Virus record (IMG/VR): IMGVR_UViG_3300031951_021456
Coordinates: 1 to 64,000 of that record
Length of the DNA stretch: 64,000 nucleotides
Direction: 5' to 3' (one strand)
In this document: piece by piece, positions 725-51,525 of the stretch
How the letters are laid out: every line of letters starts with the position of its first letter
How positions within the stretch are numbered: the stretch's first letter is position 1
Made by a program: the position numbers and the translations under genes
Notes under the pieces: model-generated
Seen by the model: the letters and a program-made list of their open reading frames with translations, nothing else
What the model was told of the DNA's origin: nothing
Databases searched by the model: none

Positions 725-1477
725 ATGGAACTTCAGCAACTTGACTGGAAAAATTACACAACTGAAACGAATATTTTCAACTATAAAATTCCAAATGTTG
801 ATGAAAATATTGCCACGATTGAAGTAATATCTACTAAGAATAGTAATAGCGGTGAAACAAAATCTGTAGTAACTATTAATAAGACCACAACTAATAAGGT
901 TCTGAAAGAGTGTACTCCAGCTTTTGTTAAGCGTTCTTTTTTTGAACTAATTAAAACTAAATCCCCATTTGATTATCGTTCTCTTACACTAGAAGATTAC
1001 CTATTTTCTGATGATAGCATTTTATCTGAAGATATATCGGAGAAAAATTTGATTTGGTTTTATTTTAGTGGAGATATGTTGTTTAAGACGAATGGAATTC
1101 CGATTGCCACACCAATATATTATGATTATAATTGTACTCCATTTTCAAACGAATATTGCTATCTTAAACCTTTATTAAATTATTTAAAAGAACATCCATG
1201 GGTCGTAAATAAAGAAGACCTTGAAATTGAAAACATACCATATTATAATTCTGAAAAGAATCGTGATAGATGTATTAGGGATATTTGTATTTGTCCAGAT
1301 CAAGATACCTATGATAGAGTTTATCAACAGTATAGTGGAGATAAATATTTTTCTCGTAGAATTAGAGAAGCTATTTCTAGCCAACTGTTTATGTATAATT
1401 CTGAAAAACACCATGATTGGCTCGGTATCGCACCTTTTCTAAAAAATCCACCCAAACAACTGGCACAAGACTCTTGA
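725..1477 (+). CDS. Hypothetical protein
   Basis: 250-aa ORF on the majority strand. Confidence 0.75.
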   Translation: MELQQLDWKNYTTETNIFNYKIPNVDENIATIEVISTKNSNSGETKSVVTINKTTTNKVLKECTPAFVKRSFFELIKTKSPFDYRSLTLEDYLFSDDSILSEDISEKNLIWFYFSGDMLFKTNGIPIATPIYYDYNCTPFSNEYCYLKPLLNYLKEHPWVVNKEDLEIENIPYYNSEKNRDRCIRDICICPDQDTYDRVYQQYSGDKYFSRRIREAISSQLFMYNSEKHHDWLGIAPFLKNPPKQLAQDS

Positions 1478-1502
1478 CCTTTTGAGAAAACTCTGCTAAC
1501 TT
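1445..1502 (+). promoter_or_regulatory. Sigma70-type early promoter with upstream half-palindrome
   Basis: TTGACC(1474)-17 bp-TAACTT(1497) with extended TG; AACTGGCAC at 1458-1466. Confidence 0.7.
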
Positions 1503-1514
1503 AAGTAAGTCAAG

Positions 1515-1572
1515 AGATGAGGCAGCAATCAAAAAGCTCTAGACATTTAATCTAACCAGCAAACTCATCTAG
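1515..1572 (+). ncRNA. CAGCA stem element copy 1, inner anticodon-like hairpin (TTT)
   Basis: AGATGAG/CTCATCT outer stem, GCAGCAA, inner TAGA-CATTTAA-TCTA. Confidence 0.65.
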
Positions 1573-1592
1573 TAACACACCACACAAAAATT

Positions 1593-1823
1593 ATGAAAAC
1601 TCATAGACAACTTGAACCACATGAAGTCCAGATGGTTCAAGAGCATGTTGATTTGGAAGCACGAATTCAGCGATTTCAGCAATTCATTCAAAATCCAGGA
1701 AATGTGAATTTTTCAGAAGCTGAAATTGCTAGAATGAAAGCTCAAGAGATGGCTATGAGCATGTATTTGAGCATCTTGAGTGATAGACTAGCTGTAGTAT
1801 TTAAAGAAACTGGAAACGGTTAA
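1593..1823 (+). CDS. Small coiled-coil phage protein (crAss001_48-like)
   Basis: EHVDLEARIQRFQQFI...QEMAMSMYLSILSDR pattern. Confidence 0.6.
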   Translation: MKTHRQLEPHEVQMVQEHVDLEARIQRFQQFIQNPGNVNFSEAEIARMKAQEMAMSMYLSILSDRLAVVFKETGNG

Positions 1824-1837
1824 TTAAATACAATAAA

Positions 1838-1875
1838 AAGTTGATACAGCATCAACAAAACAAACAATCAACTTG
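1838..1875 (+). promoter_or_regulatory. CAGCA stem element copy 2 (no inner hairpin) abutting the RBS of the DUF2828 gene
   Basis: AAGTTGAT-ACAGCA...ATCAACTT-GAGG-N6-ATG(1885). Confidence 0.65.
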
Positions 1876-1884
1876 AGGTTAATT

Positions 1885-3348
1885 ATGACTTTTATTCAAG
1901 CTCTTAAAAGTGAATTGAATACCACTACAACTGAAAATGGCGCAAAGGCTTATAATTCTACTACAAATGAATGCCTGGATCTTTATGGCTCAATCGGTGC
2001 ATGTCGTACTAATTTGACTCATGCAGAACGTCTCTTCTTTAATGCATATGAGCAAGACCCGGAAACTGCTGTAAGAATTCTATTCTATTCAAGGGATATT
2101 CGGGGCGCAAGTCAAGGCGAACGTGCAGTGTTTAGGGCATTAATGCCGAAACTTGCACAAAAGAATCCTAAGGTAGCTTCCCGCCTAGTTTCACTGATTC
2201 CATACTACGGTCGCTGGGATGATCTCCTGTGCCTTGAAGGAACTTTGGTTTGGACTGAGGTACTTGAGACTATCAAAACTCAACTAAATGAAGATCTTAA
2301 TAGTGAGAAAGTATCGCTAGCTGCAAAATGGATGCCGAGTATCAATGCTTCTTCAAAAGAAAGCAAGCGTCTTGGTCGTCTAATTGCAGATCACATGGGC
2401 TGGTCAGAACGACAGTACCGGAAGAATCTTGCAACTCTACGAGCAAAGATTAACATCGTAGAAACTTCAATGTGCAAAAAGGATTGGAGTTCTATTGATT
2501 ATGAACGTCTTCCTTCCCGCGCTGCGATGATGTATCGCAATGCATTCAAAAAACATGATGAGGATCGCTATTCTGAATATCTCTCTCGTGTAGAGAACGG
2601 TGAAGCAAAGATCAATACGGGAACTCTTTTTCCTTATGATATTGTGAATAAGTATCTCTACAAAGGTTCTACCAACGATAAGACTCTTGAACAACAATGG
2701 GATGCTCTTCCTGATTATATGGAAGGTTTGGAATTCAACGGACTTGTTGTTGCTGATGTTTCATATTCAATGACATGGAATGGGGGAATGCCAATGGCTG
2801 TATGTCTCTCTCTTGCAGTTTATATTGCTGAGCGCAATCAATCAGAGATTTGGAAAAACAAATTTCTAACTTTCTCTCAATCTCCAACACTTGAAACTAT
2901 TCTAGGTAACACTATTGAAGAAAAAATCAGACATATTCTCAAATCAGATCCGGGAGGAAACACTGATCTGATGGCTACATTTAAAGTAATTCTTGATTCC
3001 GCAACTTCCAATAATGTCGCAGCAAATGATATGCCACAGAAACTGATCATTGTTTCTGATATGCAATTTGATCAGGCTTGCAGATCTAACAAGCGTACTA
3101 ATTTTGAACAGATTCAAAAGCTGTATCGTAAGGCTGGTTACGAAATGCCAGAGCTAGTATTCTGGAATGTAAATGCAAGTGCTAATGTGCCTATTCAAGC
3201 TGATGACACTGGAACAGCTCTTGTTTCTGGCTGTAGTCCTGCTATTCTGAAGAGTGTTTTGAGTGGTAAAATCATATCTCCAGTAGAAGTGATGATGAAT
3301 AGTCTTTATGTGGAACGCTATGATCCAATTGGACTAGCCTTTGCATAA
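1885..3348 (+). CDS. DUF2828 family protein with C-terminal vWA domain (Ro60/TROVE-like architecture)
   Basis: TTENG, RDIRG..GER, YGRWDDL, LAAKWMP, MIDAS-like DVSYSM, SDMQFD, VFWNV; GAGG RBS before ATG 1885. Confidence 0.85.
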   Translation: MTFIQALKSELNTTTTENGAKAYNSTTNECLDLYGSIGACRTNLTHAERLFFNAYEQDPETAVRILFYSRDIRGASQGERAVFRALMPKLAQKNPKVASRLVSLIPYYGRWDDLLCLEGTLVWTEVLETIKTQLNEDLNSEKVSLAAKWMPSINASSKESKRLGRLIADHMGWSERQYRKNLATLRAKINIVETSMCKKDWSSIDYERLPSRAAMMYRNAFKKHDEDRYSEYLSRVENGEAKINTGTLFPYDIVNKYLYKGSTNDKTLEQQWDALPDYMEGLEFNGLVVADVSYSMTWNGGMPMAVCLSLAVYIAERNQSEIWKNKFLTFSQSPTLETILGNTIEEKIRHILKSDPGGNTDLMATFKVILDSATSNNVAANDMPQKLIIVSDMQFDQACRSNKRTNFEQIQKLYRKAGYEMPELVFWNVNASANVPIQADDTGTALVSGCSPAILKSVLSGKIISPVEVMMNSLYVERYDPIGLAFA

Positions 3349-3357
3349 ATAAACGGA

Positions 3358-3417
3358 AAGATGGTTCAGCAAATTTACAAAAACTGTTTTGCTATAACTG
3401 TTCCTCAAACCATCTTG
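3358..3417 (+). ncRNA. CAGCA stem element copy 3, inner anticodon-like hairpin (GCT)
   Basis: AAGATGGTT/AACCATCTT outer stem, CAGCAA, inner ACTGTT-TTGCTAT-AACTGT; late-promoter-like ATAAATA at 3345. Confidence 0.7.
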
Positions 3418-3423
3418 TTAAAC

Positions 3424-3533
3424 CGGGAAGTAGCTCAATTGATAGAGCAACGTAAAATGGATCTTGTTAAGATCTTAACCGCATTTAAAAGCTTTGGGTG
3501 CCGTGGTTGTAGGTTTAAGTCCTACCTTCCCGA
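3424..3533 (+). tRNA. tRNA-Pro(TGG) with 38-nt insertion (3453-3490) in the anticodon stem
   Basis: CGGGAAG/CTTCCCG acceptor, GCTC/GAGC D stem, ACG[insert]GC-TTTGGGT-GCCGT anticodon arm, GTAGG-TTTAAGT-CCTAC T arm. Confidence 0.8.
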
Positions 3534-3536
3534 TTC

Positions 3537-3574
3537 GTGGTAAGATCGTTTGAGATTTTCTTCTTACCACTTTT
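3537..3574 (+). terminator. Hairpin plus U-tract (terminator or processing signal)
   Basis: GTGGTAAGA...TCTTACCAC-TTTT, 16-nt loop. Confidence 0.45.
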
Positions 3575-3579
3575 CTAAT

Positions 3580-3631
3580 TAGATGATTCAGCAATTAATC
3601 TCTTACTGCTAATAAGACCAAAATCATCTAG
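3580..3631 (+). ncRNA. CAGCA stem element copy 4, canonical anticodon stem-loop (GCT)
   Basis: TAGATGATT/AATCATCTA outer stem, CAGCAA, inner TCTTA-CTGCTAA-TAAGA. Confidence 0.75.
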
Positions 3632-3644
3632 TCTAAATAATCAA

Positions 3645-3716
3645 AGCGGAGGAGTGTCACGGTAGCACGAGGGTCTCATAAGCCCTAAGAGTAAGTTCAA
3701 TTCTTACCTCTCGCCA
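3645..3716 (+). tRNA. tRNA with CAT anticodon (Met-like), bulged acceptor stem
   Basis: AGGGT-CTCATAA-GCCCT; GTAAG-TTCAATT-CTTAC; acceptor GCGGAG/CTC(T)CGC. Confidence 0.7.
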
Positions 3717-3743
3717 TTGATAGATTAATCTATCATATTTTAA

Positions 3744-3779
3744 ACCGATTTTAAAATTACAAATGACCATTTGATCGGT
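3744..3779 (+). promoter_or_regulatory. Candidate structured leader element A
   Basis: ACCGAT...TTAAA...TGACCATTTG-ATCGGT; covaries with 4468..4504. Confidence 0.5.
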
Positions 3780-3798
3780 ATGGTTTGGGAAAAATTAA

Positions 3799-4386
3799 AT
3801 GTTTAAATCTAATCTTGTTGCAACTATTCAGGTGAATGGAATCCCACTAAGGGAATTTGGTAGCAATGTATATCTACCATATGATACAGAATATCAAATT
3901 ATGTTAAAAAATAAGACCATTCTCAGGCAAGCGGTAAGAGTTACAATTGCTGGGGAAAGTATGTGGGATGGTAGTATTGTTTTAAATGGTCGTGAAACTT
4001 TTGATTATGGTAACTTTAATAGAAATAACAAGTTTAAATTTAAAAAACTTTCTGAGAATGGATCGCATAATTATCCATTTTTATTTGAAGATTGTTTAAT
4101 TATTATTCGCTTTGTTTCGGAAACTGTACCTATTATGGATTTGGATATGAATAAAAAAGCAACATATAATAAAACCGGATTTACTCCTAATGTTTCAGAT
4201 TGGGAAACCGTGTGGCCTGATTCTGAAGAAACAATGTTCTTGAAGTTAAATGGAGAATTTAAACATAAACAAATTGTGGAACCAATCACAGTAAAAACGA
4301 AGATTGAATGTAAATCATGTGGAACCAAAAATCCAGCAGGGTTTGAATATTGTTCAACATGTGGAGATAAAGTTATATTCAATTAA
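3799..4386 (+). CDS. Phage protein with C-terminal zinc ribbon, paralog of 4523..5224
   Basis: VNG..LREFG..VY.P...EY; C-terminal CKSCG...CSTCG. Confidence 0.8.
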   Translation: MFKSNLVATIQVNGIPLREFGSNVYLPYDTEYQIMLKNKTILRQAVRVTIAGESMWDGSIVLNGRETFDYGNFNRNNKFKFKKLSENGSHNYPFLFEDCLIIIRFVSETVPIMDLDMNKKATYNKTGFTPNVSDWETVWPDSEETMFLKLNGEFKHKQIVEPITVKTKIECKSCGTKNPAGFEYCSTCGDKVIFN

Positions 4387-4395
4387 TTAATAATT

Positions 4396-4452
4396 TAGAT
4401 GATTCAGCAATCTTAAAACTTTCTTATTGGTTTAGAAAACAAAATCATCTAG
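4396..4452 (+). ncRNA. CAGCA stem element copy 5, inner hairpin with TTGG loop
   Basis: TAGATGATT/AATCATCTA, CAGCAA, inner TTTCT-TATTGGTTT-AGAAA. Confidence 0.7.
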
Positions 4453-4467
4453 TCTAAATAAAAACTG

Positions 4468-4504
4468 ACAGACTTAAACACTAAAAACTGAGCATTTAGT
4501 CTGT
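4468..4504 (+). promoter_or_regulatory. Candidate structured leader element B
   Basis: ACAGAC-TTAAA...TGAGCATTTA-GTCTGT. Confidence 0.5.
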
Positions 4505-4522
4505 ATGCTCCCAAAGATAAAA

Positions 4523-5224
4523 ATGATGTACCAGAACAATCTTGCAGCGGCAATTAAGGTAAATGGAAACATTCTCCGAGAGTTTGGGGATACTGTTTAT
4601 ATTCCATTTGGCTCCGAATATCAAATTCGCCTAAGAAATTTAATTAGCTCTAGAGTTAAACTAAATGTTGAAATTGATGGACAAAACGTAACTGATGGTG
4701 GTCTAGTTTTAAATGCACTTCAATCAATTGATCTAGAGCGGTTTATTAGAAATGGAAATTTAACCACAGGCAATCGCTTTAAGTTTATTGAGAGAACTTC
4801 AAAAATTGAGAATCATCGTGGAATTAAACTAGAAGATGGTTTGATTATCATTCGCTATGAGTTTGAAATTCCACAAGTTACCTTCAAATCCTTATCCCAA
4901 CCAGTCTGGGATGCTTATGGTACTGCTAGGGTTGGGGGGACATATATAAATTCAGTATCGCAAAGATCAGTTTTCTATAATGAAACAGGAATTACTGTAG
5001 AAGGCTCTAAGAGTAATCAACAATTTAGTACAACAAATTGGCGTGGATCTTCGGGGGGAGAATATACCATAATTTTTAAACTCTTAGGTGAAACTGAAGA
5101 GAACAAAAAAGTAAGAGAACCAGTAACTGTAAAAACAAAACTTGAATGCAAAACTTGTGGAACCAAAAATCATGCGACATCTAAGTTTTGTTCAGAGTGT
5201 GGAACAGCTTTAGAAATCCTATAA
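4523..5224 (+). CDS. Phage protein with C-terminal zinc ribbon
   Basis: Paralog of 3799..4386; CKTCG...CSECG; start 4523/4526 by alignment with the paralog. Confidence 0.8.
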   Translation: MMYQNNLAAAIKVNGNILREFGDTVYIPFGSEYQIRLRNLISSRVKLNVEIDGQNVTDGGLVLNALQSIDLERFIRNGNLTTGNRFKFIERTSKIENHRGIKLEDGLIIIRYEFEIPQVTFKSLSQPVWDAYGTARVGGTYINSVSQRSVFYNETGITVEGSKSNQQFSTTNWRGSSGGEYTIIFKLLGETEENKKVREPVTVKTKLECKTCGTKNHATSKFCSECGTALEIL

Positions 5225-5260: not shown

Positions 5261-5704
5261 ATGGAAAAGTTATTTAAGCTTCTTAGTGATACACAAGCAA
5301 CACTCTTTGTTTTGTTTCAAAAAACTTGGAATTATCATCACAATGTTCATGGAACTGACTTCCCTCAGTTGCATGAACTTTTTGGTGAGCAATATACTGA
5401 AATGTTTGAGGAGATTGATCGCCTTAGTGAGCACATGAGATATCTCAACATTCGTCCAGTGTCCAGAATGGAGCGGATCGTAGAGGTTGCAGCCATTGAG
5501 GGGCCAGCAAACGCCAATCAGGAGCTTGATGCCCGTGGGATGGTAGAGCAGCTTCAGAGCGACAATGAGATGCTAATAGAGATGTTGAAGGATGTATCTG
5601 AAGAAGCCGAAAGTCAAAGGAGCTATGCAACGGCTAATCTTTCTCAAGATTTAATGGAAGCTCATGGTAAAAGTGTGTATAAATTGAGGTCATTTTTACA
5701 ATGA
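5261..5704 (+). CDS. dps: Dps / ferritin-like DNA protection protein
   Basis: YHHNVHG..F..LHELF.EQY....EIDRLSEH ferroxidase motifs; late-promoter-like ATAAATA at 5239. Confidence 0.9.
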   Translation: MEKLFKLLSDTQATLFVLFQKTWNYHHNVHGTDFPQLHELFGEQYTEMFEEIDRLSEHMRYLNIRPVSRMERIVEVAAIEGPANANQELDARGMVEQLQSDNEMLIEMLKDVSEEAESQRSYATANLSQDLMEAHGKSVYKLRSFLQ

Positions 5705-7498: not shown

Positions 7499-7718
7499 AG
7501 AGACTTTACTCAGATTCTTTGGAAATAGCCTGCTAATTATCGGATATTGTGCCATTCTTTACAGTGATTTTAAAATTGGACTATCTATTAAATTTTTAGG
7601 AGGTCTTCTGATTATGCCATCTCTAATTCAACTGAAGATGTGGGATGGTATAATAATTACTTCATTTTTCTCCTTCATTGAAGGCACACGAATTATTCAA
7701 TTATATTTCTTCCAATAA
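7491..7718 (+). CDS. Small membrane protein
   Basis: Hydrophobic segments; ATG at 7491. Confidence 0.65.
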   Translation: MNKETLLRFFGNSLLIIGYCAILYSDFKIGLSIKFLGGLLIMPSLIQLKMWDGIIITSFFSFIEGTRIIQLYFFQ

Positions 7719-7720
7719 TT

Positions 7721-8080
7721 ATGAAAATCTCTAGAGCACATAAAAATTTTGCAGCTCGGTTAAGGCATCAAACTTCTCTAGAATATCCTGAACGATTTCT
7801 AGGACCTAATTGGAAGGATGTACTGAACTTTTGGCTCTATTTGGATACTTTGAGTCGTGAAGAACTTAAGATAGTTCATAATCGTTATTGTGCTTTAGGG
7901 TGGGCGGAATCCCTAAAGAATCTTACACTGAATGCTGCCAAAGTTACTATCGGCTATGAATATGAAGATGCAGCTTGGTTGGCACCTACTTCATTTGCAT
8001 CTGCTTATGCAACCCTTGAACTCATTGGTTCTCATAATCTAGAGGCCTTTACATTTCTTCCCTTGTTTTTGAATCTATGA
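7721..8080 (+). CDS. MKIS/GPNW paralog family, array 1 copy 1
   Basis: LEYPERFLGPNWKDVLNFWLYLDTL...ATLELIGSHNL..FLPLF. Confidence 0.85.
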   Translation: MKISRAHKNFAARLRHQTSLEYPERFLGPNWKDVLNFWLYLDTLSREELKIVHNRYCALGWAESLKNLTLNAAKVTIGYEYEDAAWLAPTSFASAYATLELIGSHNLEAFTFLPLFLNL

Positions 8081-8436
8081 AAATCTCTAAAACTCATCAA
8101 AGACTTGCCGATCGCTTAAATGACCAAACCGCTCTAGAATACCCTGAACATTTTCTAGGACCCAATTGGAAGAATGTATTGAACTTTTGGTTTTATTTGG
8201 ATACTTTGAGTTATGAAGATCTTGAGATAGTTTTTAATCGTTATTTGGCTTTAGGGTGGGTGGACCACCTAAAGGATCTTACAAGGAATGTTGCTAAAGA
8301 TACTATCGGCAATGATTATGAATATGCAACTTTCCGTGCAACTCCCACCTATGAATCAGCTTATACAACAAGTGAACTCATTGGCTCTCATAATCTAGAG
8401 TCCCTTAAGTTTCTTCCCTTGTTTTTGAATCTATGA
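8077..8436 (+). CDS. MKIS/GPNW paralog, array 1 copy 2
   Basis: Same motifs, ATGA overlap. Confidence 0.85.
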   Translation: MKISKTHQRLADRLNDQTALEYPEHFLGPNWKNVLNFWFYLDTLSYEDLEIVFNRYLALGWVDHLKDLTRNVAKDTIGNDYEYATFRATPTYESAYTTSELIGSHNLESLKFLPLFLNL

Positions 8437-8786
8437 AAATCTCTAAAACTCATAAAAGATTTGCAGCTCATTTAGATAACCAAACCGCTCTAAAATACCC
8501 TGAACGTTTTCTAGGACCTAATTGGAAGGATGTATTGAACTTCTGGTTGTACTTGGATACTTGGAGTGCTGAGGATACTGAGATAGTTTTTAATCGTTAT
8601 TGGGATTTGGGGGTGTGTGGACCCCTAAAAGGTCTTACCTGGAGAACTGCTAAAGATACTATCGGTATTGAATATGCATCTGTTGCTTGGGATGTACCTT
8701 TTACAATTGGAAGTTCTTATGCAACCCTTGAACTCATTGGTTCTCATAATCTAGAGTCTTTGACTTTTCTTCCTTTGTTTTTATAA
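8433..8786 (+). CDS. MKIS/GPNW paralog, array 1 copy 3
   Basis: Same motifs, ATGA overlap. Confidence 0.85.
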   Translation: MKISKTHKRFAAHLDNQTALKYPERFLGPNWKDVLNFWLYLDTWSAEDTEIVFNRYWDLGVCGPLKGLTWRTAKDTIGIEYASVAWDVPFTIGSSYATLELIGSHNLESLTFLPLFL

Positions 8787-8788
8787 TT

Positions 8789-9220
8789 ATGACACTTTAC
8801 AAAGCAGATGTTTGGCTAGGAAGCAATTCTGGATTTCAAACCGTTGAAATAAATTCAAGTAGCATTGTTGGAGTCACGGAACAAATAAAAACAAGATATC
8901 ATGTAAAATCTGAAAATATACGAAACATTAGGACAGTTAATGATGAAAATGCCACCGATTCTGGTTCCCTTATTGGGATTGGAGGTTTATTTCTATTTGT
9001 TCTTTTTGCATTGTATCCAACTATAGTTCTCACTATCTTATTTGGAGGAACTGGAGCATGGCTAATGACAAAACTTTCAGGAAAACCATTTAGCAGTATT
9101 TGCGAAAAGAAAAATAGAAAACTCTATAATAGTATTCTAATTGTTAGTCTTCTCTGTGGAGGATTTGGATTTTATGTTGGAAATAATATTCAGATTCAGC
9201 AAAACTCACAAGAAAAATGA
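8789..9220 (+). CDS. Membrane protein interrupting array 1
   Basis: 2-3 hydrophobic helices in C-terminal half. Confidence 0.75.
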   Translation: MTLYKADVWLGSNSGFQTVEINSSSIVGVTEQIKTRYHVKSENIRNIRTVNDENATDSGSLIGIGGLFLFVLFALYPTIVLTILFGGTGAWLMTKLSGKPFSSICEKKNRKLYNSILIVSLLCGGFGFYVGNNIQIQQNSQEK

Positions 9221-9627
9221 AAATCTCAACAGCACATCAAATATTTGCTGATCGTTTAAAAGACCAAACAGCTCTAGAATGCCCTGAACGATTTCTAGGA
9301 CCTAATTGGAAAGATGTACTGAACTTTTGGATTTATTTGGATACTTTGAGTCGTGAAGATTTTAGGTTACTTAATAAGCGTTATTATGCTTTAGATGTAG
9401 ATGCTAGAGTTTTTGCTAGGGACAATGCCTTTAAAGCTGCTGAAGCTACTATAGTTCACGAATATGGAAATGTAGCTTGGTTGGTAACACCTACATATGC
9501 ATCTAGTCATGCAACCCTTGAACTCATCGCTTCACATAATCTAGAATCTAGTCATGCAACCCTTGAACTCATCGCTTCACATAATCTAGAATCTCTTAAG
9601 TTTCTTCCTTTGTTTCTAAATCTATGA
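9217..9627 (+). CDS. MKIS/GPNW paralog, array 1 copy 4 (internal 45-bp duplication)
   Basis: Same motifs; SSHATLELIASHNLE twice. Confidence 0.85.
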   Translation: MKISTAHQIFADRLKDQTALECPERFLGPNWKDVLNFWIYLDTLSREDFRLLNKRYYALDVDARVFARDNAFKAAEATIVHEYGNVAWLVTPTYASSHATLELIASHNLESSHATLELIASHNLESLKFLPLFLNL

Positions 9628-10040
9628 AAATCTCTAAAACTCATCAAAGACTTGCAGATGATCTAAACAGGTTGCACGACCTTCAAGGTGCTCTAGACCA
9701 TCCAAAATATTATCTGGGATCCAACTGGAAAGATGTCATTAACTTTTGGTTATTTCTAGATACTTTGACTATAGCACAATTATGTATTATTAATCATAGA
9801 TATTTGGCCTTGGATCGCGATGATAAGAATGTTTTAATATCCGTTTGGGATACTTATACTGGATGTGAGAAATTTTACTATCAGGTTGCTTATGAAGCAG
9901 TTTGTGCAGTTTCAAAACCAGCTTCATTATTTTGGATTCCTAGCGCAAAAGCTAAAGCAACAATAGAAATTATGGTTAGGGATGATCTCCTAAATTCTAA
10001 AAAATCTTTAGTTTTTCTTCCTTTATTTATAAATATATGA
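9624..10040 (+). CDS. MKIS/GPNW paralog, array 1 copy 5 (divergent)
   Basis: LGSNWKDVINFWLFLDTL...FLPLF. Confidence 0.8.
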   Translation: MKISKTHQRLADDLNRLHDLQGALDHPKYYLGSNWKDVINFWLFLDTLTIAQLCIINHRYLALDRDDKNVLISVWDTYTGCEKFYYQVAYEAVCAVSKPASLFWIPSAKAKATIEIMVRDDLLNSKKSLVFLPLFINI

Positions 10041-10825
10041 TATCATTTAATAGTCTCTCAAATCTAGGAAGACTTGGAAACCAAATGTTTCAATATGCTT
10101 CCCTCAAAGGAATAGCAAAACATAGGGGTTTTGATTTCTGCATCCCAATGAAAGATGTTGCAGGTAAAATTGACATTAATGTGAGAAATTCAGATGCAAA
10201 TATTTACAATACATTTAAACTAAAAAATGTAAATTATAATATCACACAAAATCCACAAATTAGAGAAAAAACATTCAATTTTGATCAAGACTTGTTTGAG
10301 AACTGTCCAGATAATGTAGATCTATTTGGGTATTTTCAAAATGAAAAATATTTTGAACACATTGAAGAAGAAATAAAAGAAGATTTTGCGTTTTCAAATA
10401 AAATACAAGAATTATGTAGAAATTTTTTAGGTGCCCGCGAATATATTTCATTACATATTAGGAGAGGAGATTATATCAATAATTCAAATCATCCAGTTCA
10501 ACCACTTAATTATTATGAAGTAGCTCTTAAAGAACTGGATGTTAATATTCCAGTAATAGTCTTTTCGGATGATTATGAATGGTGTAAAACCCAAACAATA
10601 TTTGAATCATCTCGCTTTTTAATTTCTGAAGGCAATTCAACAGAAATTGATCTTTGCTTACAAACTTTGTGTTCTTATCATATTATTAGTAATTCATCAT
10701 TTTCTTGGTGGGGTAGTTATCTAGCTAAAAGCAAAAAAACAATAGCGCCAAAGATTTGGTTTTCAGGATCTTTAATAAACAATGAATGTTCTGGTATATA
10801 TAGAAAGTCTTGGATCGTAATTTAG
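10037..10825 (+). CDS. GT11 alpha-1,2-fucosyltransferase-like
   Basis: GRLGNQMFQYA, GYFQ, HIRRGDY, SNSSFSWW. Confidence 0.9.
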   Translation: MISFNSLSNLGRLGNQMFQYASLKGIAKHRGFDFCIPMKDVAGKIDINVRNSDANIYNTFKLKNVNYNITQNPQIREKTFNFDQDLFENCPDNVDLFGYFQNEKYFEHIEEEIKEDFAFSNKIQELCRNFLGAREYISLHIRRGDYINNSNHPVQPLNYYEVALKELDVNIPVIVFSDDYEWCKTQTIFESSRFLISEGNSTEIDLCLQTLCSYHIISNSSFSWWGSYLAKSKKTIAPKIWFSGSLINNECSGIYRKSWIVI

Positions 10826-31983: not shown

Positions 31984-32002
31984 TATGGAAATTGCAACAT
32001 TC

Positions 32003-32380
32003 ATGAAAATCTCAACAACACATAAAGAATTTTCAGATCGCTTAAATGACCAAACTGCTCTAGAATATCCCGAACATTTTCTTGGACCTAATTGGAAAGA
32101 TGTATTGAACTTCTGGATTTATTTGGATACTTTGAGTGTTGAAGATTTTAGATTAATTATTAATCGTTTTTGGGATGTATGTGCAGATGCTAGAGTTTCT
32201 GCTAGGGACAAGGCCTTTAAAGCTGCTGAAGCTACTATAGGTAATGATTATACAAATATGGCTTTGTCTGCCGCTGCCGCTGCCGATGGCCCTGCTGGGT
32301 CTTCTTATGCAACTCTTGATCTCATTGGTTCTCATAAGCTAGAGTCTCTTAAGTTTCTTCCTTTGTTTTTAACGAAATGA
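32003..32380 (+). CDS. MKIS/GPNW paralog, array 2 copy 1
   Basis: Family motifs; start at MKIS. Confidence 0.85.
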   Translation: MKISTTHKEFSDRLNDQTALEYPEHFLGPNWKDVLNFWIYLDTLSVEDFRLIINRFWDVCADARVSARDKAFKAAEATIGNDYTNMALSAAAAADGPAGSSYATLDLIGSHKLESLKFLPLFLTK

Positions 32381-32781
32381 AAATCTCTAAAACACATCAA
32401 AAATTTGAATATCTGTTAAGATATAGTGATCATCACGTCCGTCGTCGCCAAACTACTCTAGAATACCCTGAACTATTTCTTGGACCCAATTGGAAAAATG
32501 TCCTGAACTTCTGGATTTATTTGGATACTTTGAGTGATGAAAAGCTTAATTTAAGTGATGAAAAGCTTAATTTAATTGATAGGCTCTATTCGTCTTTAGA
32601 TGATTTGGGGACCTTAAAGATATTTTCTTGGAAAGCTGCTAAAGATACTATAGATAATGAATATGCAGATGCAGCTTGGTGGGCCACTCCTACAATTGTA
32701 TATGGTTATGCAACTCTTGAACTCATCGCTTCACAAGAGCTTAAGTCTCTTAAGTTTCTTCCTTTGTTTTTAACGAAATGA
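32377..32781 (+). CDS. MKIS/GPNW paralog, array 2 copy 2
   Basis: Family motifs; 21-bp duplication. Confidence 0.85.
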   Translation: MKISKTHQKFEYLLRYSDHHVRRRQTTLEYPELFLGPNWKNVLNFWIYLDTLSDEKLNLSDEKLNLIDRLYSSLDDLGTLKIFSWKAAKDTIDNEYADAAWWATPTIVYGYATLELIASQELKSLKFLPLFLTK

Positions 32782-33143
32782 AAATCTCTAAAACACATAA
32801 AGAATTTGCAGATGATTTAAAAGACCAAACTGCTCTAGAATACCCTGAACGATTTCTAGGACCCAATTGGAAGAATGTCCTGAACTTCTGGATTTACTTG
32901 GATACTTTGAGTGATGAAGATTTTGATATAGTTACTAAGCGTTATTTGGATTTAGATGCAGATGCTAGAGTTTCTGCTTGGGACAATGCCTTTAAAGCTA
33001 CTGAAGCTACTATATGTGATGATTATGTATATGTAATTTGGTACTCTGCCGGTATAGATGCATCTGTTTATGCAACCCTTGAACTCATCGCTTCACATAA
33101 GCTTGAGACTCTCAATTTTCTTCCACTGTTTCTAACCCCATGA
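32778..33143 (+). CDS. MKIS/GPNW paralog, array 2 copy 3
   Basis: Family motifs. Confidence 0.85.
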   Translation: MKISKTHKEFADDLKDQTALEYPERFLGPNWKNVLNFWIYLDTLSDEDFDIVTKRYLDLDADARVSAWDNAFKATEATICDDYVYVIWYSAGIDASVYATLELIASHKLETLNFLPLFLTP

Positions 33144-33505
33144 AAATCTCCACCGCCCATCAAAAATTTGCAGATCGGTTAAATAACCAAACTGCTCTAG
33201 AATACCCTGAACTTTATCTAGGACCCAATTGGAAGGATGTATTGAACTTCTGGTTGTACTTGGATACTTTGAGTCGTGAAGATTTTAGGTTACTTAATAA
33301 GCGTTATTATGCTTTAGAAGAAGATGCTAGAGTTTCTGCTAGAGACAATGCTTTTAAAGCTGCTGAAGCTACTATAGTTCACGAATATGGAAATGTAGCT
33401 TGGTTTGTAACACCTATATATGTATCTAGTCATGCAACCCTTGAACTCATTGGTTCTCATAATCTAGAATCTCTTAAGTTTCTTCCTTTGTTTTTAACGA
33501 AATGA
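33140..33505 (+). CDS. MKIS/GPNW paralog, array 2 copy 4
   Basis: Family motifs; core near-identical to 9217..9627. Confidence 0.85.
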   Translation: MKISTAHQKFADRLNNQTALEYPELYLGPNWKDVLNFWLYLDTLSREDFRLLNKRYYALEEDARVSARDNAFKAAEATIVHEYGNVAWFVTPIYVSSHATLELIGSHNLESLKFLPLFLTK

Positions 33506-33870
33506 AAATCTCAACAACACATCAACAATTTGCAGATCGTTTAAGAAACAAAAGAGCCATAAAACATCCAGAAGAATTTCTAGGTAAAAATTGGAAAGAT
33601 GTTTTGAACTTTTGGATCTTTATAGATACTTTGAATGAAGATCAGTGGAAGAGTATTAAAGATGCTCATTATTCTTTAAGACTCCATGAATGTAATCTTG
33701 CTATTGATGCTGCTATTGATGCTGCTTGGCTTGCTGCAGGCGCCGGTGGATGCGATGCTGCTTTGTTTACTTCTGGTTATGCTGCTTGCGAAATTATAGG
33801 TTCTCATATACTTAAAGAACAAGGTAAATCTTTAGTCTCCTTTCCACTATACTTAAAATTTTCTCAATAA
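33502..33870 (+). CDS. MKIS/GPNW paralog, array 2 copy 5 (divergent)
   Basis: FLGKNWKDVLNFWIFIDTL. Confidence 0.8.
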   Translation: MKISTTHQQFADRLRNKRAIKHPEEFLGKNWKDVLNFWIFIDTLNEDQWKSIKDAHYSLRLHECNLAIDAAIDAAWLAAGAGGCDAALFTSGYAACEIIGSHILKEQGKSLVSFPLYLKFSQ

Positions 33871-49316: not shown

Positions 49317-50351
49317 ATGTCTGATACTCCAGTTTCTTTCAATTTAGGTACACCTGAACTTGCGCAGTCTATCACAAATCATTTTATCACCAGAAGATAT
49401 CTGAACGGTGGTAGCTCACATTTAAAGACTTTGAAAATTGAATATGATTTGCAAAATCACGATCCCCAACAGCTTATTGATTTGTTTGTAAATATTGGAT
49501 ATAAAGTGATAGGTTGCCTAAGCACTGACTCATTATTATATAATGAACATAATTTAATTTATACTCGGTTCTTACGTGGTGGTTATTCTAATATTAGTAT
49601 TCATGGTGATAAGACTAATTTTGATGAAATTGAAAATCTTATTTTATCAAAATTCAACAAGTGGGATGGCAACAATAAATCTAAAATAAAATGGTGTTTT
49701 CTCAATGATTGTGGTAAGATTGAGTATCTAGAATCAAATTTAGAGGAAAAAAATCCACCCTTCACAGAAATGTATCCATTTCTTAATGGTGAAAGTCTTC
49801 ATGATTATTATGAGCGATATAACAATTCTTCTGCATCTATTCTCCTTTTGCAGGGTCCACCCGGTACTGGTAAAACTACATTTATTCGGGGGTTACTACA
49901 GCATCTTAAAAAGAGTGCATTATTGTCTTATGATGATGCAATCTTAAAAAGTGATAATTTTTTGAATATTTTCATTAAGGATAATAATATAAATTTTCTA
50001 GTTTTTGAAGATGCTGATGCTTATCTGACCTCTAGAGAATCTGGTAATAAGGTGATTCATAAATTTCTCAATGCTGGTGATGGTCTCATTTCTAAATCTA
50101 ATAAGAAAATTATCTTCACTACAAATCTTCAAAGTATTACCGATATTGATTCGGCACTTACTCGGCCAGGAAGGTGTCATGATATTTTACAATTTCGTAG
50201 TCTCACTACAGATGAATCTATTAAAGTTGCCAGCATTTGTAAAATCGAAATTAAATTACCAGAAAAAGAATATACAATTGCAGAAATATTTAATACACAA
50301 ACCAATACTGAGAAGAAAGTAATCCGAAATATTGGGTTTGGCAATCCATGA
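49317..50351 (+). CDS. AAA+ ATPase (BCS1-like)
   Basis: GPPGTGKT, FEDAD, FTTN, DSALTRPGR. Confidence 0.85.
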   Translation: MSDTPVSFNLGTPELAQSITNHFITRRYLNGGSSHLKTLKIEYDLQNHDPQQLIDLFVNIGYKVIGCLSTDSLLYNEHNLIYTRFLRGGYSNISIHGDKTNFDEIENLILSKFNKWDGNNKSKIKWCFLNDCGKIEYLESNLEEKNPPFTEMYPFLNGESLHDYYERYNNSSASILLLQGPPGTGKTTFIRGLLQHLKKSALLSYDDAILKSDNFLNIFIKDNNINFLVFEDADAYLTSRESGNKVIHKFLNAGDGLISKSNKKIIFTTNLQSITDIDSALTRPGRCHDILQFRSLTTDESIKVASICKIEIKLPEKEYTIAEIFNTQTNTEKKVIRNIGFGNP

Positions 50352-50707
50352 AAATATCCAACACCCATCAAAGTTTTGCAGATAATTTTAATCTCCAAAC
50401 TGCTCTATATTATCCTGAACAATTCTTGGGTCCCAATTGGAAAGATGTACTGAACTTCTGGCTCTATTTGGATACTTTACATTATGAAGTTCTTAGGTTA
50501 ATTGACATGAGATATTATACTTTAGGGGAAATAGGGACATTAAAGAAACTTTCTTGGAATGTTGCTAAAGATACTATAGGTCTTAAATATGCAGATGCAG
50601 CTTGGCACGCCAGCCCAACACTTGCAGATGGTTGTGCAACCTGTGAACTTATCGGCTCACACAATCTTAAGTCTTTGAATTTTCTTCCCTTGTTTTTGAA
50701 TCTATGA
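50348..50707 (+). CDS. MKIS/GPNW paralog, array 3 copy 1
   Basis: Family motifs. Confidence 0.85.
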   Translation: MKISNTHQSFADNFNLQTALYYPEQFLGPNWKDVLNFWLYLDTLHYEVLRLIDMRYYTLGEIGTLKKLSWNVAKDTIGLKYADAAWHASPTLADGCATCELIGSHNLKSLNFLPLFLNL

Positions 50708-51063
50708 AAATCTCTACAACACATCAAAAATTTGCAAATGATTTAAAAGACCAAACTGCTCTAGAATACCCTGAATATTTTATAGGTCCCAATTGGAAAG
50801 ATGTTCTGAACTTCTGGATTTATTTGGACACTTTGAGCGGTGAAAAGCGTAAGATAATTAGCAATCGCTTTGATAATCTTGAAGAGCTGGGCCGATTAAC
50901 AAGTATTACTCTGAAAGCTGCTGAAGATACTATAGGTGTTAAATATGTAGATGCAGCTTGGAGTGCCCCTCCATCATTTGCATCTGCTTATGCAACCTGT
51001 GAACTTATCAATTCACATAATCTAGAGTCTTTTAATTTTCTTCCTTTGTTTTTGAATCCATGA
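50704..51063 (+). CDS. MKIS/GPNW paralog, array 3 copy 2
   Basis: Family motifs. Confidence 0.85.
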   Translation: MKISTTHQKFANDLKDQTALEYPEYFIGPNWKDVLNFWIYLDTLSGEKRKIISNRFDNLEELGRLTSITLKAAEDTIGVKYVDAAWSAPPSFASAYATCELINSHNLESFNFLPLFLNP

Positions 51064-51473
51064 AAATCTCTAAAATACATAAAAAATTTGCAGATCATTT
51101 AGATGATCAAGATGCCCTAAAATATCCTGAAGAATTTCTAGGTACTAATTGGAAAGATGTTTTGAACTTCTGGATTTATTTGGACACTTTGAGTGATGGA
51201 GAACATAATTTAATTAATGAACATAATTTAATTAATGAACATTATTACAATTTAAATTGTATTCATGTAAAAGAAGCCAATAAGAAAGCTACTAGACGTA
51301 TTATAGGTTACTATTGTGCAAATGCAGCTTGGAATGCCACTCCTACAGTTGCATCTGCTTATGCAACCATTGAACTCATTGGTTCTCATAATCTAGAGTC
51401 TATTAATTTACTTTCATTGTTTTATCAATCAGAAACTTTTAAGTGTCACTTCAAAAACTGGACTAGCACCTAA
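51060..51473 (+). CDS. MKIS/GPNW paralog, array 3 copy 3
   Basis: Family motifs; 18-bp duplication; altered C-terminus. Confidence 0.8.
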   Translation: MKISKIHKKFADHLDDQDALKYPEEFLGTNWKDVLNFWIYLDTLSDGEHNLINEHNLINEHYYNLNCIHVKEANKKATRRIIGYYCANAAWNATPTVASAYATIELIGSHNLESINLLSLFYQSETFKCHFKNWTST

Positions 51474-51525
51474 ATCAACCTGAGGACAAACAGCTATTAT
51501 GATAAAAGTTAATTCACTCAAAGAC

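What the first reader, a model, noticed from the sequence alone, without database searches (positions are those of the whole stretch)
1838..1887. Cargo-less CAGCA element abutting the DUF2828 ribosome-binding site: likely autoregulatory operator
Seen: this copy lacks the inner hairpin. Its 3' stem strand ATCAACTT (1867-1874) runs straight into GAGG and ATG 1885. A second ATCAAC (1851-1856) allows an alternative short hairpin GTTGAT-ACAGC-ATCAAC that would free the RBS-proximal strand. Inference: a two-state translational switch in which protein binding stabilises the long stem and represses its own synthesis. This independently suggests DUF2828 is the ligand of the element.
Basis: partly seen in the sequence, partly recalled or inferred. 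Interest (0 to 1): 0.68.

Follow-up and report, generated by a model that had tools for sequence, protein, structure and literature searches.

The report
Y-RNA-like hairpin before Ro60-like gene
A small RNA hairpin directly in front of a phage gene is a stripped-down copy of the RNAs that the encoded Ro60-like ring protein probably binds, so it may let the protein sense and limit its own production.

Summary
Bases 1838-1874 form an 8-bp stem around a CAGCA core. The stem has no inner hairpin and ends one base before the GAGG/ATG (1875/1885) of a DUF2828+DUF7788 gene.

It is a real family member. A covariance model built without it or its orthologues scores it 28 bits (E 0.002). That model finds only five hits in the 64-kb window, all on the + strand at 1513-4453, around the gene; a simpler pattern scan finds no further convincing copy in the 248-kb phage genome.

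The protein folds like Ro60 (TROVE-like ring plus vWA). The elements are built like Y RNAs: a terminal stem, a conserved 5'-strand motif and variable inserts that mimic tRNA parts. Their motif is ACAGCAA, not the canonical CGAA motif, and Rfam does not hold them.

A copy of the element ends within 45 nt of the start codon in 24 of 35 viral lineages and 5 of 17 lineages from cellular genome assemblies. It often touches the Shine-Dalgarno sequence. These gene-proximal copies are systematically short.

This supports a leader binding site for the gene's own protein, most likely a feedback operator. No binding or expression data exist. The proposed alternative-hairpin switch is not conserved.

The parts
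1838..1874 (+). Target: insert-less CAGCA element. The 8-bp stem pairs 1838-1845 with 1867-1874. The core CAGCA lies at 1847-1851 and is followed by a 15-nt A/C-rich loop remainder.
   Evidence: Sequence; MFE fold; R1 hit at 1837-1876, 28.0 bits, E 0.002; outer stem kept in 12 of 12 orthologues.
1851..1856 (+). Second ATCAAC. It can pair with GTTGAT (1840-1845) to form the alternative hairpin.
   Evidence: Energies and pair probabilities. Present in only 4 of about 10 distinct orthologues.
1875..1879 (+). Shine-Dalgarno GAGGT. It starts at the base after the last stem pair and lies 6 nt before the ATG.
   Evidence: Sequence. GGAG or GAGG sits at the same place in most orthologues.
1885..3348 (+). 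Gene for a 487-aa DUF2828 + DUF7788 protein with a Ro60-like fold. It carries a DxSxS MIDAS motif at D291/S293/S295.
   Evidence: Pfam; PHROG 850 'RNA-binding protein'; AF2 model with pLDDT 85.6; the Foldseek top 13 hits are all Ro60/Rsr/TROVE; invariant residues.
1513..1573 (+). CAGCA element A, with an anticodon-arm-like inner hairpin.
   Evidence: R1 24.8 bits, E 0.01; fold.
3357..3418 (+). CAGCA element C, directly 5' of an aberrant tRNA-like gene.
   Evidence: R1 38.6 bits.
3579..3632 (+). CAGCA element D, 5' of tRNA-Met (3646-3715).
   Evidence: R1 37.3 bits; tRNA.
4395..4453 (+). CAGCA element E.
   Evidence: R1 41.9 bits.
1593..1823 (+). 76-aa crAss001_48-like ORF lying between element A and the target. 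In relatives these two elements are adjacent.
   Evidence: Pfam PF21825; upstream regions of L003 and L004 to L021.

Best explanation
The hairpin at 1838-1874 is the gene-proximal, insert-less member of a phage family of Y-RNA-like elements. Each element has a basal stem closed by WAG...CUWG, a 5'-strand ACAGCAA motif, a variable insert and an A-rich 3' side. These elements are the probable RNA partners of the Ro60-like DUF2828 protein encoded immediately downstream.

Because the stem ends at the Shine-Dalgarno sequence, the hairpin must be part of the mRNA leader. The most likely mechanism is autogenous translational control by ligand mimicry. When the protein exceeds its free Y-like RNAs, it binds the leader copy, and the roughly 55-kDa ring blocks 30S access to the adjoining SD and AUG.

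Shown:
- family membership
- the Ro60-like fold
- co-localisation of the elements with the gene, always on the gene strand
- conserved placement at the start of the gene
- the minimal size of the proximal copies

Inferred: that the protein binds the element, that the hairpin is present on the translated mRNA, and that binding represses rather than stabilises.
For: Family membership:
- An independent covariance model scores the target at E 0.002, and only five hits occur in the window, all at 1513-4453. A pattern scan of the whole 248-kb genome finds no further convincing copy.
- All 141 R1 hits in 56 viral and named-phage loci and all 114 in 80 loci from cellular genome assemblies lie on the gene strand.
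- A simple descriptor finds 271 copies on the gene strand, 21 on the opposite strand and about 18 per shuffle.
- Internal non-Watson-Crick pairs are 5 G.U against 0 A.C, which fits RNA rather than DNA.

The protein:
- The AF2 model (pLDDT 85.6) matches Ro60, Rsr and phage phiLo Ro60 as the top 13 PDB hits, with E down to 8e-8 and TM up to 0.61.
- The MIDAS DxSxS motif is invariant.

Precedent:
- Canonical phage Ro60 binds Y-like RNAs that are encoded upstream of its own gene (PMC12135203).
- A Felixounavirus Ro60-like protein next to tRNA genes counters the Ppl defence system (bioRxiv 10.1101/2024.10.10.617714).

Placement at the gene start:
- A proximal element occurs in 24 of 35 viral lineages, against about 5 of 35 in reverse-complement and shuffled controls.
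- It occurs in 5 of 17 genome-assembly lineages, against 0 to 0.2 in controls.
- By my reading of the upstream sequences, the stem abuts the SD in about 17 lineages, and the family's conserved 3' G often doubles as the first G of the SD.
- In L039 the SD lies inside the loop.
- Abutting the start of a protein gene is specific to DUF2828: 16 of 18 proximal elements do so, against 5 of 79 others, and most of those 5 are artefacts.
- Proximal copies have shorter inserts (median 32 against 43 nt, p = 0.002) and never carry T-arm mimics (0 of 20 against 15 of 80).
- The arms are invariant in sequence across orthologues whose proteins are only about 62-65% identical.
- An ORF inserted in this genome landed upstream of the hairpin and left the hairpin-gene junction intact.
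Against: - There is no direct evidence of binding, of transcript ends or of regulation.
- The juxtaposition is not universal. About a third of viral lineages, most genome-assembly lineages and Felixounavirus lack a canonical copy within 45 nt. In several lineages the copy lies 30-60 nt away, with another hairpin in between.
- Most proximal copies are simply the last unit of an upstream array of elements and tRNAs. Only 2 lineages show a promoter directly 5' of the copy. Co-transcription alone could therefore explain the adjacency.
- The target deviates from the consensus, with CAGCAU in place of CAGCAA and AGUU in place of AGAY. Its closest relative, L003, has CCGCA.
- The stem itself does not sequester the SD.
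Confidence: 0.5

Rival explanations
1. The hairpin is only the last unit of a co-transcribed array of Y-like small RNAs. It is processed out like its neighbours, binds the protein as a minimal ligand or has lost its cargo, and has no regulatory effect on the gene. Its closeness to the start codon reflects operon compaction.
For: Elements form arrays with tRNAs on both sides of the gene. Only 2 lineages have a promoter directly 5' of the proximal copy. Many lineages lack an abutting copy. Core variants are no more frequent in proximal copies than in distal ones.
Against: When the stem ends 0-6 nt from the SD, cutting it out would leave an mRNA with almost no leader. Abutting the start of a protein gene is almost exclusive to DUF2828. 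Proximal copies are systematically minimal. In L039 the SD lies inside the loop.
Confidence: 0.25
2. The hairpin is a 5' stabiliser or processing barrier. It protects the DUF2828 mRNA after the tRNA and Y-RNA array has been processed. It acts with or without bound protein, so any autoregulation would be positive.
For: The hairpin sits at the extreme 5' side of the coding unit. Promoter-like sites lie directly 5' of it in L073/L080 and L076-78. From general knowledge, Ro60 binding protects Y RNAs from decay.
Against: A stabiliser would not need the family's ACAGCAA motif or the WAG...CUWG closure, yet proximal copies keep both.
Confidence: 0.12
3. The short GTTGAT/ATCAAC hairpin competes with the long stem, and protein binding selects the long, repressive form.
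For: Both conformers exist and are close in energy: -4.8 against -5.5 kcal/mol, with probabilities of 0.24 against 0.74. The second ATCAAC is shared by the window, L003, L004 and L007.
Against: The second ATCAAC is absent from L001/L017, L006, L011 and L014. It is also absent from L012/L015/L016, where the arms changed but no matching second copy followed. The consensus fold keeps only the outer stem. Neither conformer pairs the SD.
Confidence: 0.07
4. The feature is a chance inverted repeat, a decaying relic, or a DNA-level site such as a promoter or operator.
For: The folding z-score is only -2.2. A weak TTGATA-16-AACAAT promoter-like match lies inside the element. The core deviates from the consensus.
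Against: The covariance model gives E 0.002. The arms are invariant in 12 orthologues, with a compensatory change. Insert length varies from 13 to 42 nt, so no promoter spacing is kept. All 255 hits in related loci lie on the gene strand. The count of promoter-like sites is below the shuffled expectation.
Confidence: 0.04

Closest known systems
Ro60/Rsr with Y RNAs, including YrlA (Rfam RF02553) and Thermus phage phiLo Ro60 with Yrl1/Yrl2
   Same: The protein is a ring-shaped HEAT-repeat plus vWA protein by predicted fold. The RNA genes lie next to the protein gene on the same strand, and in phiLo they lie upstream of it. Each RNA is a terminal stem with a conserved 5'-strand motif just above it. 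The internal modules mimic tRNA, and some family members give sub-threshold YrlA hits to their inserts.
   Different: Pfam files the protein under DUF2828/DUF7788, not TROVE. The motif is ACAGCAA, not GNCGAA/CGAA (PMC4201824, PMC12135203). The stems are only 7-9 bp. No Rfam family reaches its threshold. Many inserts are bare anticodon-arm mimics. No Y RNA is known to sit in the Ro60 mRNA leader as an operator.
Autogenous translational operators that mimic the protein's RNA ligand (thrS/ThrRS, ribosomal proteins L1, S8 and S15, T4 gp43, and MS2 coat protein on the replicase hairpin). Recalled from general knowledge.
   Same: A hairpin that resembles the protein's primary RNA ligand is placed at or against the SD and AUG of the protein's own gene. 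The copy is minimal and lacks the functional parts of the real ligand.
   Different: Here no binding or repression has been demonstrated. The SD lies outside the helix in this genome. The arrangement is present in only about half of the lineages.
Felixounavirus Bas63 gp130, a Ro60-like counter of the Ppl defence system (bioRxiv 10.1101/2024.10.10.617714)
   Same: A Felixounavirus DUF2828+DUF7788 protein is 37% identical to the window's protein over its full length. It lies directly upstream of a tRNA array that contains ACAGCAA elements.
   Different: That paper only guessed that some tRNA genes might be Y RNAs and defined no RNA motif. Felixounavirus has no canonical element abutting the gene start. 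I infer that Bas63 gp130 is the same protein as the tootiki one from the genus and the gene order; I did not check it.

Membership tests
CAGCA (ACAGCAA-stem) element family of this and related phages | A basal stem closed by WAG...CUWG, with CAGCA 0-3 nt after the 5' arm and an A-rich 3' side, recognised by a model that was not trained on the target | tested here: met
   R1 scores 28.0 bits, E 0.002; the noise level is 13 bits. The training set A2 excludes the target and its orthologues.
CAGCA (ACAGCAA-stem) element family of this and related phages | Lies on the strand of, and close to, a DUF2828 gene | tested here: met
   The element ends 10 nt before the ATG. All 5 window hits flank the gene. 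All 255 hits in other loci are on the gene strand.
CAGCA (ACAGCAA-stem) element family of this and related phages | An inner hairpin or tRNA-part mimic between the core and the 3' arm | tested here: not met
   The remainder is 15 nt, A/C-rich, with no predicted helix. Short inserts are typical of gene-proximal copies.
Y RNA / YrlA (Rfam RF00019, RF02553) | Score at or above the Rfam gathering threshold | tested here: not met
   No hit even at E <= 10 in 1300-4700. Only sub-threshold YrlA hits (42 and 31 bits, against a threshold of 69) to the inserts of other family members.
Y RNA / YrlA (Rfam RF00019, RF02553) | The conserved Ro-binding motif GNCGAAN0-1G (CGAA) on the 5' strand | tested here: not met
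   The motif here is ACAGCAU, and ACAGCAA in the family. The canonical motif is taken from PMC4201824 and PMC12135203.
Y RNA / YrlA (Rfam RF00019, RF02553) | Encoded next to a Ro60 orthologue | tested here: inconclusive
   The neighbouring protein is Ro60-like by fold, but it is a different Pfam family.
Y RNA / YrlA (Rfam RF00019, RF02553) | Physically bound by the Ro60 protein | not testable with these tools
   Needs EMSA or RIP. Complex prediction does not take RNA.
Ro60 / TROVE proteins | Pfam TROVE domain match | tested here: not met
   Only DUF7788 and DUF2828 match at E <= 0.01. Sequence and profile searches of PDB find no Ro60.
Ro60 / TROVE proteins | Helical-repeat ring plus a C-terminal vWA domain with a MIDAS motif | tested here: met
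   The Foldseek top 13 hits are all Ro60/Rsr/TROVE, with TM 0.40-0.61 over about 500-575 alignment columns. D291, S293 and S295 are invariant.
Autogenous translational operator | Lies within the translation initiation region of the gene whose product it resembles a ligand of | tested here: met
   The stem ends at 1874 and the SD begins at 1875. That the hairpin is on the mRNA follows from this geometry only; transcripts were not observed.
Autogenous translational operator | The protein binds the site and lowers its own translation | not testable with these tools
   No reads could be obtained. Needs reporter, toeprint and binding assays.
Two-state RNA switch | The alternative pairing is conserved or co-varies among orthologues | tested here: not met
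   It is present in 4 of about 10 distinct orthologues and does not follow the arm change in L012/L015/L016. It is absent from the consensus fold.

The most novel reading that the evidence does not exclude
DUF2828 proteins and ACAGCAA-stem RNAs form a previously unrecognised, widespread class of phage Ro60-like ribonucleoproteins. A short conserved 'handle' would load a ring protein with interchangeable tRNA-part mimics (anticodon arms such as Lys-UUU, T-arms, permuted tRNA-like domains). These mimics might act as decoys or sensors against defences that target tRNA. A cargo-less handle in the mRNA leader would then act as the feedback sensor that matches protein output to the supply of these RNAs.
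Probability: 0.2. Interest if true: 0.85.

Novelty: new variant of a known kind. Interest (0 to 1): 0.62.

Why it matters
- DUF2828 is a large family of unknown function. More than 570 loci were seen in cellular genome assemblies, and it is present in hundreds of Felixounavirus genomes and in cyanophage-like jumbo phages.
- This work gives the family a fold (Ro60-like), a concrete candidate RNA partner with a searchable motif, and a testable regulatory design.
- It extends the Ro60/Y RNA principle to a second protein family that uses a different recognition motif.
- It offers a molecular handle on a reported anti-defence gene, Bas63 gp130, which counters Ppl.
- It would be, to my knowledge, the first case of a Y-like RNA module used in cis on the Ro-like protein's own mRNA.
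- E. coli and Salmonella phages carry the system, so all of this can be tested at the bench.

Tried and rejected
- Rfam at gathering and at permissive thresholds found nothing for the window's copies.
- Sequence and profile searches of PDB gave no Ro60 hit. Only the fold search did.
- The idea that proximal copies are 'weakened' operators enriched in core variants was rejected: 7 of 33 against 27 of 129, odds ratio about 1.
- A first count of G.U against A.C mismatches was confounded by positions beyond the stem end. It was redone with internal pairs only.
- The SD-AUG hairpin predicted in the window (1875-1892, P about 0.95) is not conserved.
- A promoter inside the element (TTGATA-16-AACAAT) was rejected. 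The count of promoter-like sites is below the shuffled expectation, and the spacing is not conserved.
- A terminator was rejected because no T-run follows the stem.
- A promoter directly 5' of proximal copies was found in only 2 lineages.
- The own-genome search with R1 did not list the target. Only 150 of 593 candidates were scored, so the pattern scan was used instead.
- The costly protein searches were not needed and were not run.
- The Annual Review on bacterial Ro60 (PMC10870794) is not held.

Full report
**What is there**

The window is the first 64 kb of a 247,932-bp virus record with 33% G+C. Its nearest named relatives are Synechococcus phages B3 and B23 (Kyanoviridae).

At 1838-1874 the + strand reads:
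- a 5' arm AAGTTGAT (1838-1845)
- A1846
- CAGCA (1847-1851)
- a 15-nt A/C-rich stretch that begins with a second ATCAAC (1851-1856, sharing A1851 with the core)
- a 3' arm ATCAACTT (1867-1874)

GAGG follows at 1875-1878 and ATG at 1885.

The minimum-free-energy fold is the 8-bp long-range stem with no inner helix. The alternative 6-bp hairpin costs -4.8 against -5.5 kcal/mol and takes about a quarter of the ensemble.

The ORF from ATG 1885 encodes a 487-aa DUF2828 + DUF7788 protein. PHROGs labels its family 850 'RNA-binding protein'.

**Is it more than chance?**

Folding energy alone is unconvincing (z = -2.2). The element does, however, share its architecture with four others nearby: 1513-1573, 3357-3418, 3579-3632 and 4395-4453.

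I fetched 80 viral contigs that encode relatives of the protein. From 42 of their elements I built a covariance model, R1. I left out the target and every orthologue of it.
- With filters off, R1 finds exactly five hits at E <= 0.01 in the window. All are on the + strand at 1513-4453. The target scores 28.0 bits (E 0.002), and the next best score anywhere is 13 bits.
- A pattern scan of the whole 248-kb genome finds no further convincing copy.
- In 56 viral and named-phage loci R1 finds 141 hits. In an independent set of 80 loci from bacterial and archaeal genome assemblies it finds 114. All 255 lie on the strand of the DUF2828 gene.
- A plain descriptor gives 271 copies on the gene strand, 21 on the other strand and about 18 per shuffle.
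- Stem positions show many pair types. That set was selected for pairing, so the strand and shuffle contrasts are the real test.
- Internal non-Watson-Crick pairs are 5 G.U against 0 A.C. Together with the strand bias this indicates an RNA-level element.
- A clade-specific 15-mer scan of IMG/VR returned 10 complete elements, all on contigs that encode DUF2828. Seven have the gene inside the fetched locus. The other three are on contigs already known to carry it. Only 1 of 70 chance 15-mer hits lies near such a gene.

**What the protein is**

Sequence searches of PDB find nothing. An AlphaFold2 model built on a 39-sequence alignment is confident (pLDDT 85.6, pTM 0.83).

Its 13 best Foldseek matches in PDB are all Ro60, Rsr or TROVE structures. 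They include Ro60 bound to Y RNA and the Ro60 of Thermus phage phiLo, with E from 8e-8 to 1.5e-5 and TM up to 0.61. The C-terminal domain is a vWA fold with an invariant DxSxS motif.

DUF2828/DUF7788 is therefore a Ro60-like family that Pfam does not link to TROVE.

**What the RNA family looks like**

The consensus is:
- a 7-9-bp basal stem closed by WAG...CUWG
- ACAGCAA on the 5' strand just above the stem
- a variable insert
- an A-rich 3' side

Of 282 distinct inserts, 122 hold a hairpin with a 7-nt loop of the anticodon- or T-loop type, against 32 +/- 6 in shuffles. Fifty-seven carry a T-loop-like motif. The commonest anticodon-like loop is CUUUUAA.

Two inserts give sub-threshold matches to the tRNA-like part of Rfam YrlA, but not to its Ro-binding stem.

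This is the layout of bacterial Y RNAs (PMC4201824). Their Ro-binding motif, however, is GNCGAA/CGAA (PMC4201824, PMC12135203), and no Rfam family reaches threshold here. The literature I could search describes no such motif.

The nearest statement in print is a preprint. It notes that Felixounavirus Bas63 gp130 is Ro60-like, counters the Ppl defence system, lies upstream of tRNA genes, and 'possibly' has Y RNAs among them.

In Felixounavirus tootiki the DUF2828 orthologue is 37% identical to the window's protein. It is followed by four ACAGCAA elements within the tRNA array, one of which has a permuted tRNA-like insert. The region is conserved in at least 248 phage records.

**The specific claim: a leader operator**

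Evidence for conserved placement:
- In all 12 close orthologues the same element lies 8-13 nt before the ATG.
- All 8 pairs are kept in all 12 orthologues, and one G-C pair becomes A-U in three of them.
- The arms are invariant in sequence although the proteins are only about 62-65% identical.
- The insert varies from 13 to 42 nt.
- Across 35 viral lineages (clusters at 60% amino-acid identity) a family element ends within 45 nt of the start codon in 24. Reverse-complement and shuffled controls give about 5.
- In the genome-assembly set the figure is 5 of 17 lineages, against 0 to 0.2 in controls.
- By my reading of the upstream sequences, the stem runs straight into the SD in about 17 lineages. 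The family's conserved 3' G then often serves as the first G of GGAG.
- In L039/L042 the SD lies inside the loop.

Evidence that this is specific to the gene:
- Elements that abut the start of a protein gene are almost exclusive to DUF2828: 16 of 18 proximal elements, against 5 of 79 others, most of which are artefacts.
- Proximal copies are minimal. Their median insert is 32 nt against 43 nt (p = 0.002), and none of 20 carries a T-arm mimic against 15 of 80 others.
- Where the stem ends next to the SD there is no room for a terminator or a separate transcript. The hairpin must be part of the mRNA leader.
- In this genome a 76-aa crAss001_48-like ORF has been inserted between element A and the hairpin, which are adjacent in relatives. 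The hairpin-gene junction stayed intact.

**How it most likely works**

The protein probably binds the basal stem plus the ACAGCAA motif of its Y-like RNAs. The leader copy offers the same handle without cargo.

When free protein accumulates, it would bind the leader and sterically block 30S binding at the adjoining SD and AUG. This is the logic of the ThrRS, ribosomal-protein, T4 gp43 and MS2 coat-protein operators (general knowledge).

The shown and inferred steps are separated under Best explanation. I put 0.5 on this reading. The main rival (0.25) is that the hairpin is merely the last unit of a co-transcribed RNA array. In support of that rival, only two lineages have a promoter directly 5' of the proximal copy, and many lineages lack an abutting copy.

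**What is not supported**

- The alternative-hairpin switch is not conserved. The second ATCAAC occurs only in the window, L003, L004 and L007. It does not follow the arm change in L012/L015/L016, and the consensus fold retains only the outer stem.
- Neither conformer pairs the SD.
- The SD-AUG hairpin predicted in this genome is not conserved.
- Core variants are not enriched in proximal copies.

**Limits**

Start codons in the related loci were predicted by a simple rule. Lineage counts depend on clustering at 60% identity. The sequences used for the pair counts were chosen by a pairing descriptor.

**Verdict**

The element is a new variant of a known kind: a Ro60-type RNP with a different motif and, probably, a cis-acting leader copy.

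Noticed in passing
window 3424-3533: An aberrant tRNA-like gene of about 110 nt, with an extra hairpin between the D arm and a Cys-like (GCA) anticodon arm. Rfam scores it as tRNA at 44.6 bits, but ARAGORN does not call it. Phage B3 has a conserved counterpart annotated as tRNA-Pseudo-GCA. It follows CAGCA element C directly, and the mechanical ORF 3361-3543 overlaps it.
   Followed up: partly
window 1593-1823: A 76-aa crAss001_48-like ORF (PF21825) lies between element A and the leader hairpin. In all relatives examined the two elements are adjacent, so this looks like a recent small-gene insertion.
   Followed up: partly
related loci, e.g. L036 2371-2438, L058 2429-2489, L050 4097-4158, L054 6122-6247, L004 4495-4550: The inserts of family members mimic parts of tRNA. 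They include anticodon arms (loop CUUUUAA as in Lys-UUU, and also CUU, GCU, GCA, GUU and others), T-arms, and permuted tRNA-like domains. 122 of 282 inserts show such a hairpin, against 32 in shuffles. They might act as decoys for tRNA-targeting defence nucleases; this is speculation.
   Followed up: partly
L082 4143-4917 (Escherichia phage tootiki, Felixounavirus): Four ACAGCAA elements with AGACC...GGUCUGG stems lie between the tRNA genes downstream of the DUF2828 gene. The last one carries a T-arm plus D-arm insert. The region is conserved in at least 248 phage records, and some of them annotate 'tRNA-OTHER' or a tRNA pseudogene there. R1 missed these elements at E <= 0.05 with default filters.
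   Followed up: partly
window 7700-10100, 32000-33800, 50300-51500: Three clusters of tandemly repeated units of about 356-362 nt (60-90% identical, 13 or more copies). They appear to be paralogous small genes, each with a conserved upstream motif.
   Followed up: no
window 3799-4386 and 4505-5224: Two paralogous proteins with a C-terminal zinc ribbon (DUF7577/Zn_Ribbon_1) flank CAGCA element E. Their 3' ends are 75% identical over 87 nt. A ferritin-like gene follows at 5261-5704.
   Followed up: no
L069 about 1200-3550: The DUF2828 gene of this contig appears to be split by an insertion of about 1.2 kb that carries its own ORF, possibly a homing-endonuclease-type insertion. An element lies upstream of the first part of the gene.
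   Followed up: no
L036-L046, L068, L075 about 2436-2476: In one gut-type lineage a second conserved small hairpin (GAUUUUA...UAAAAUC) lies between the proximal element and the SD.
   Followed up: no
G000 (whole record): The 248-kb record is classed as 'provirus' by IMG/VR, although it looks like a complete T4-like (Kyanoviridae-like) phage genome. It has only 5 canonical tRNAs.
   Followed up: no
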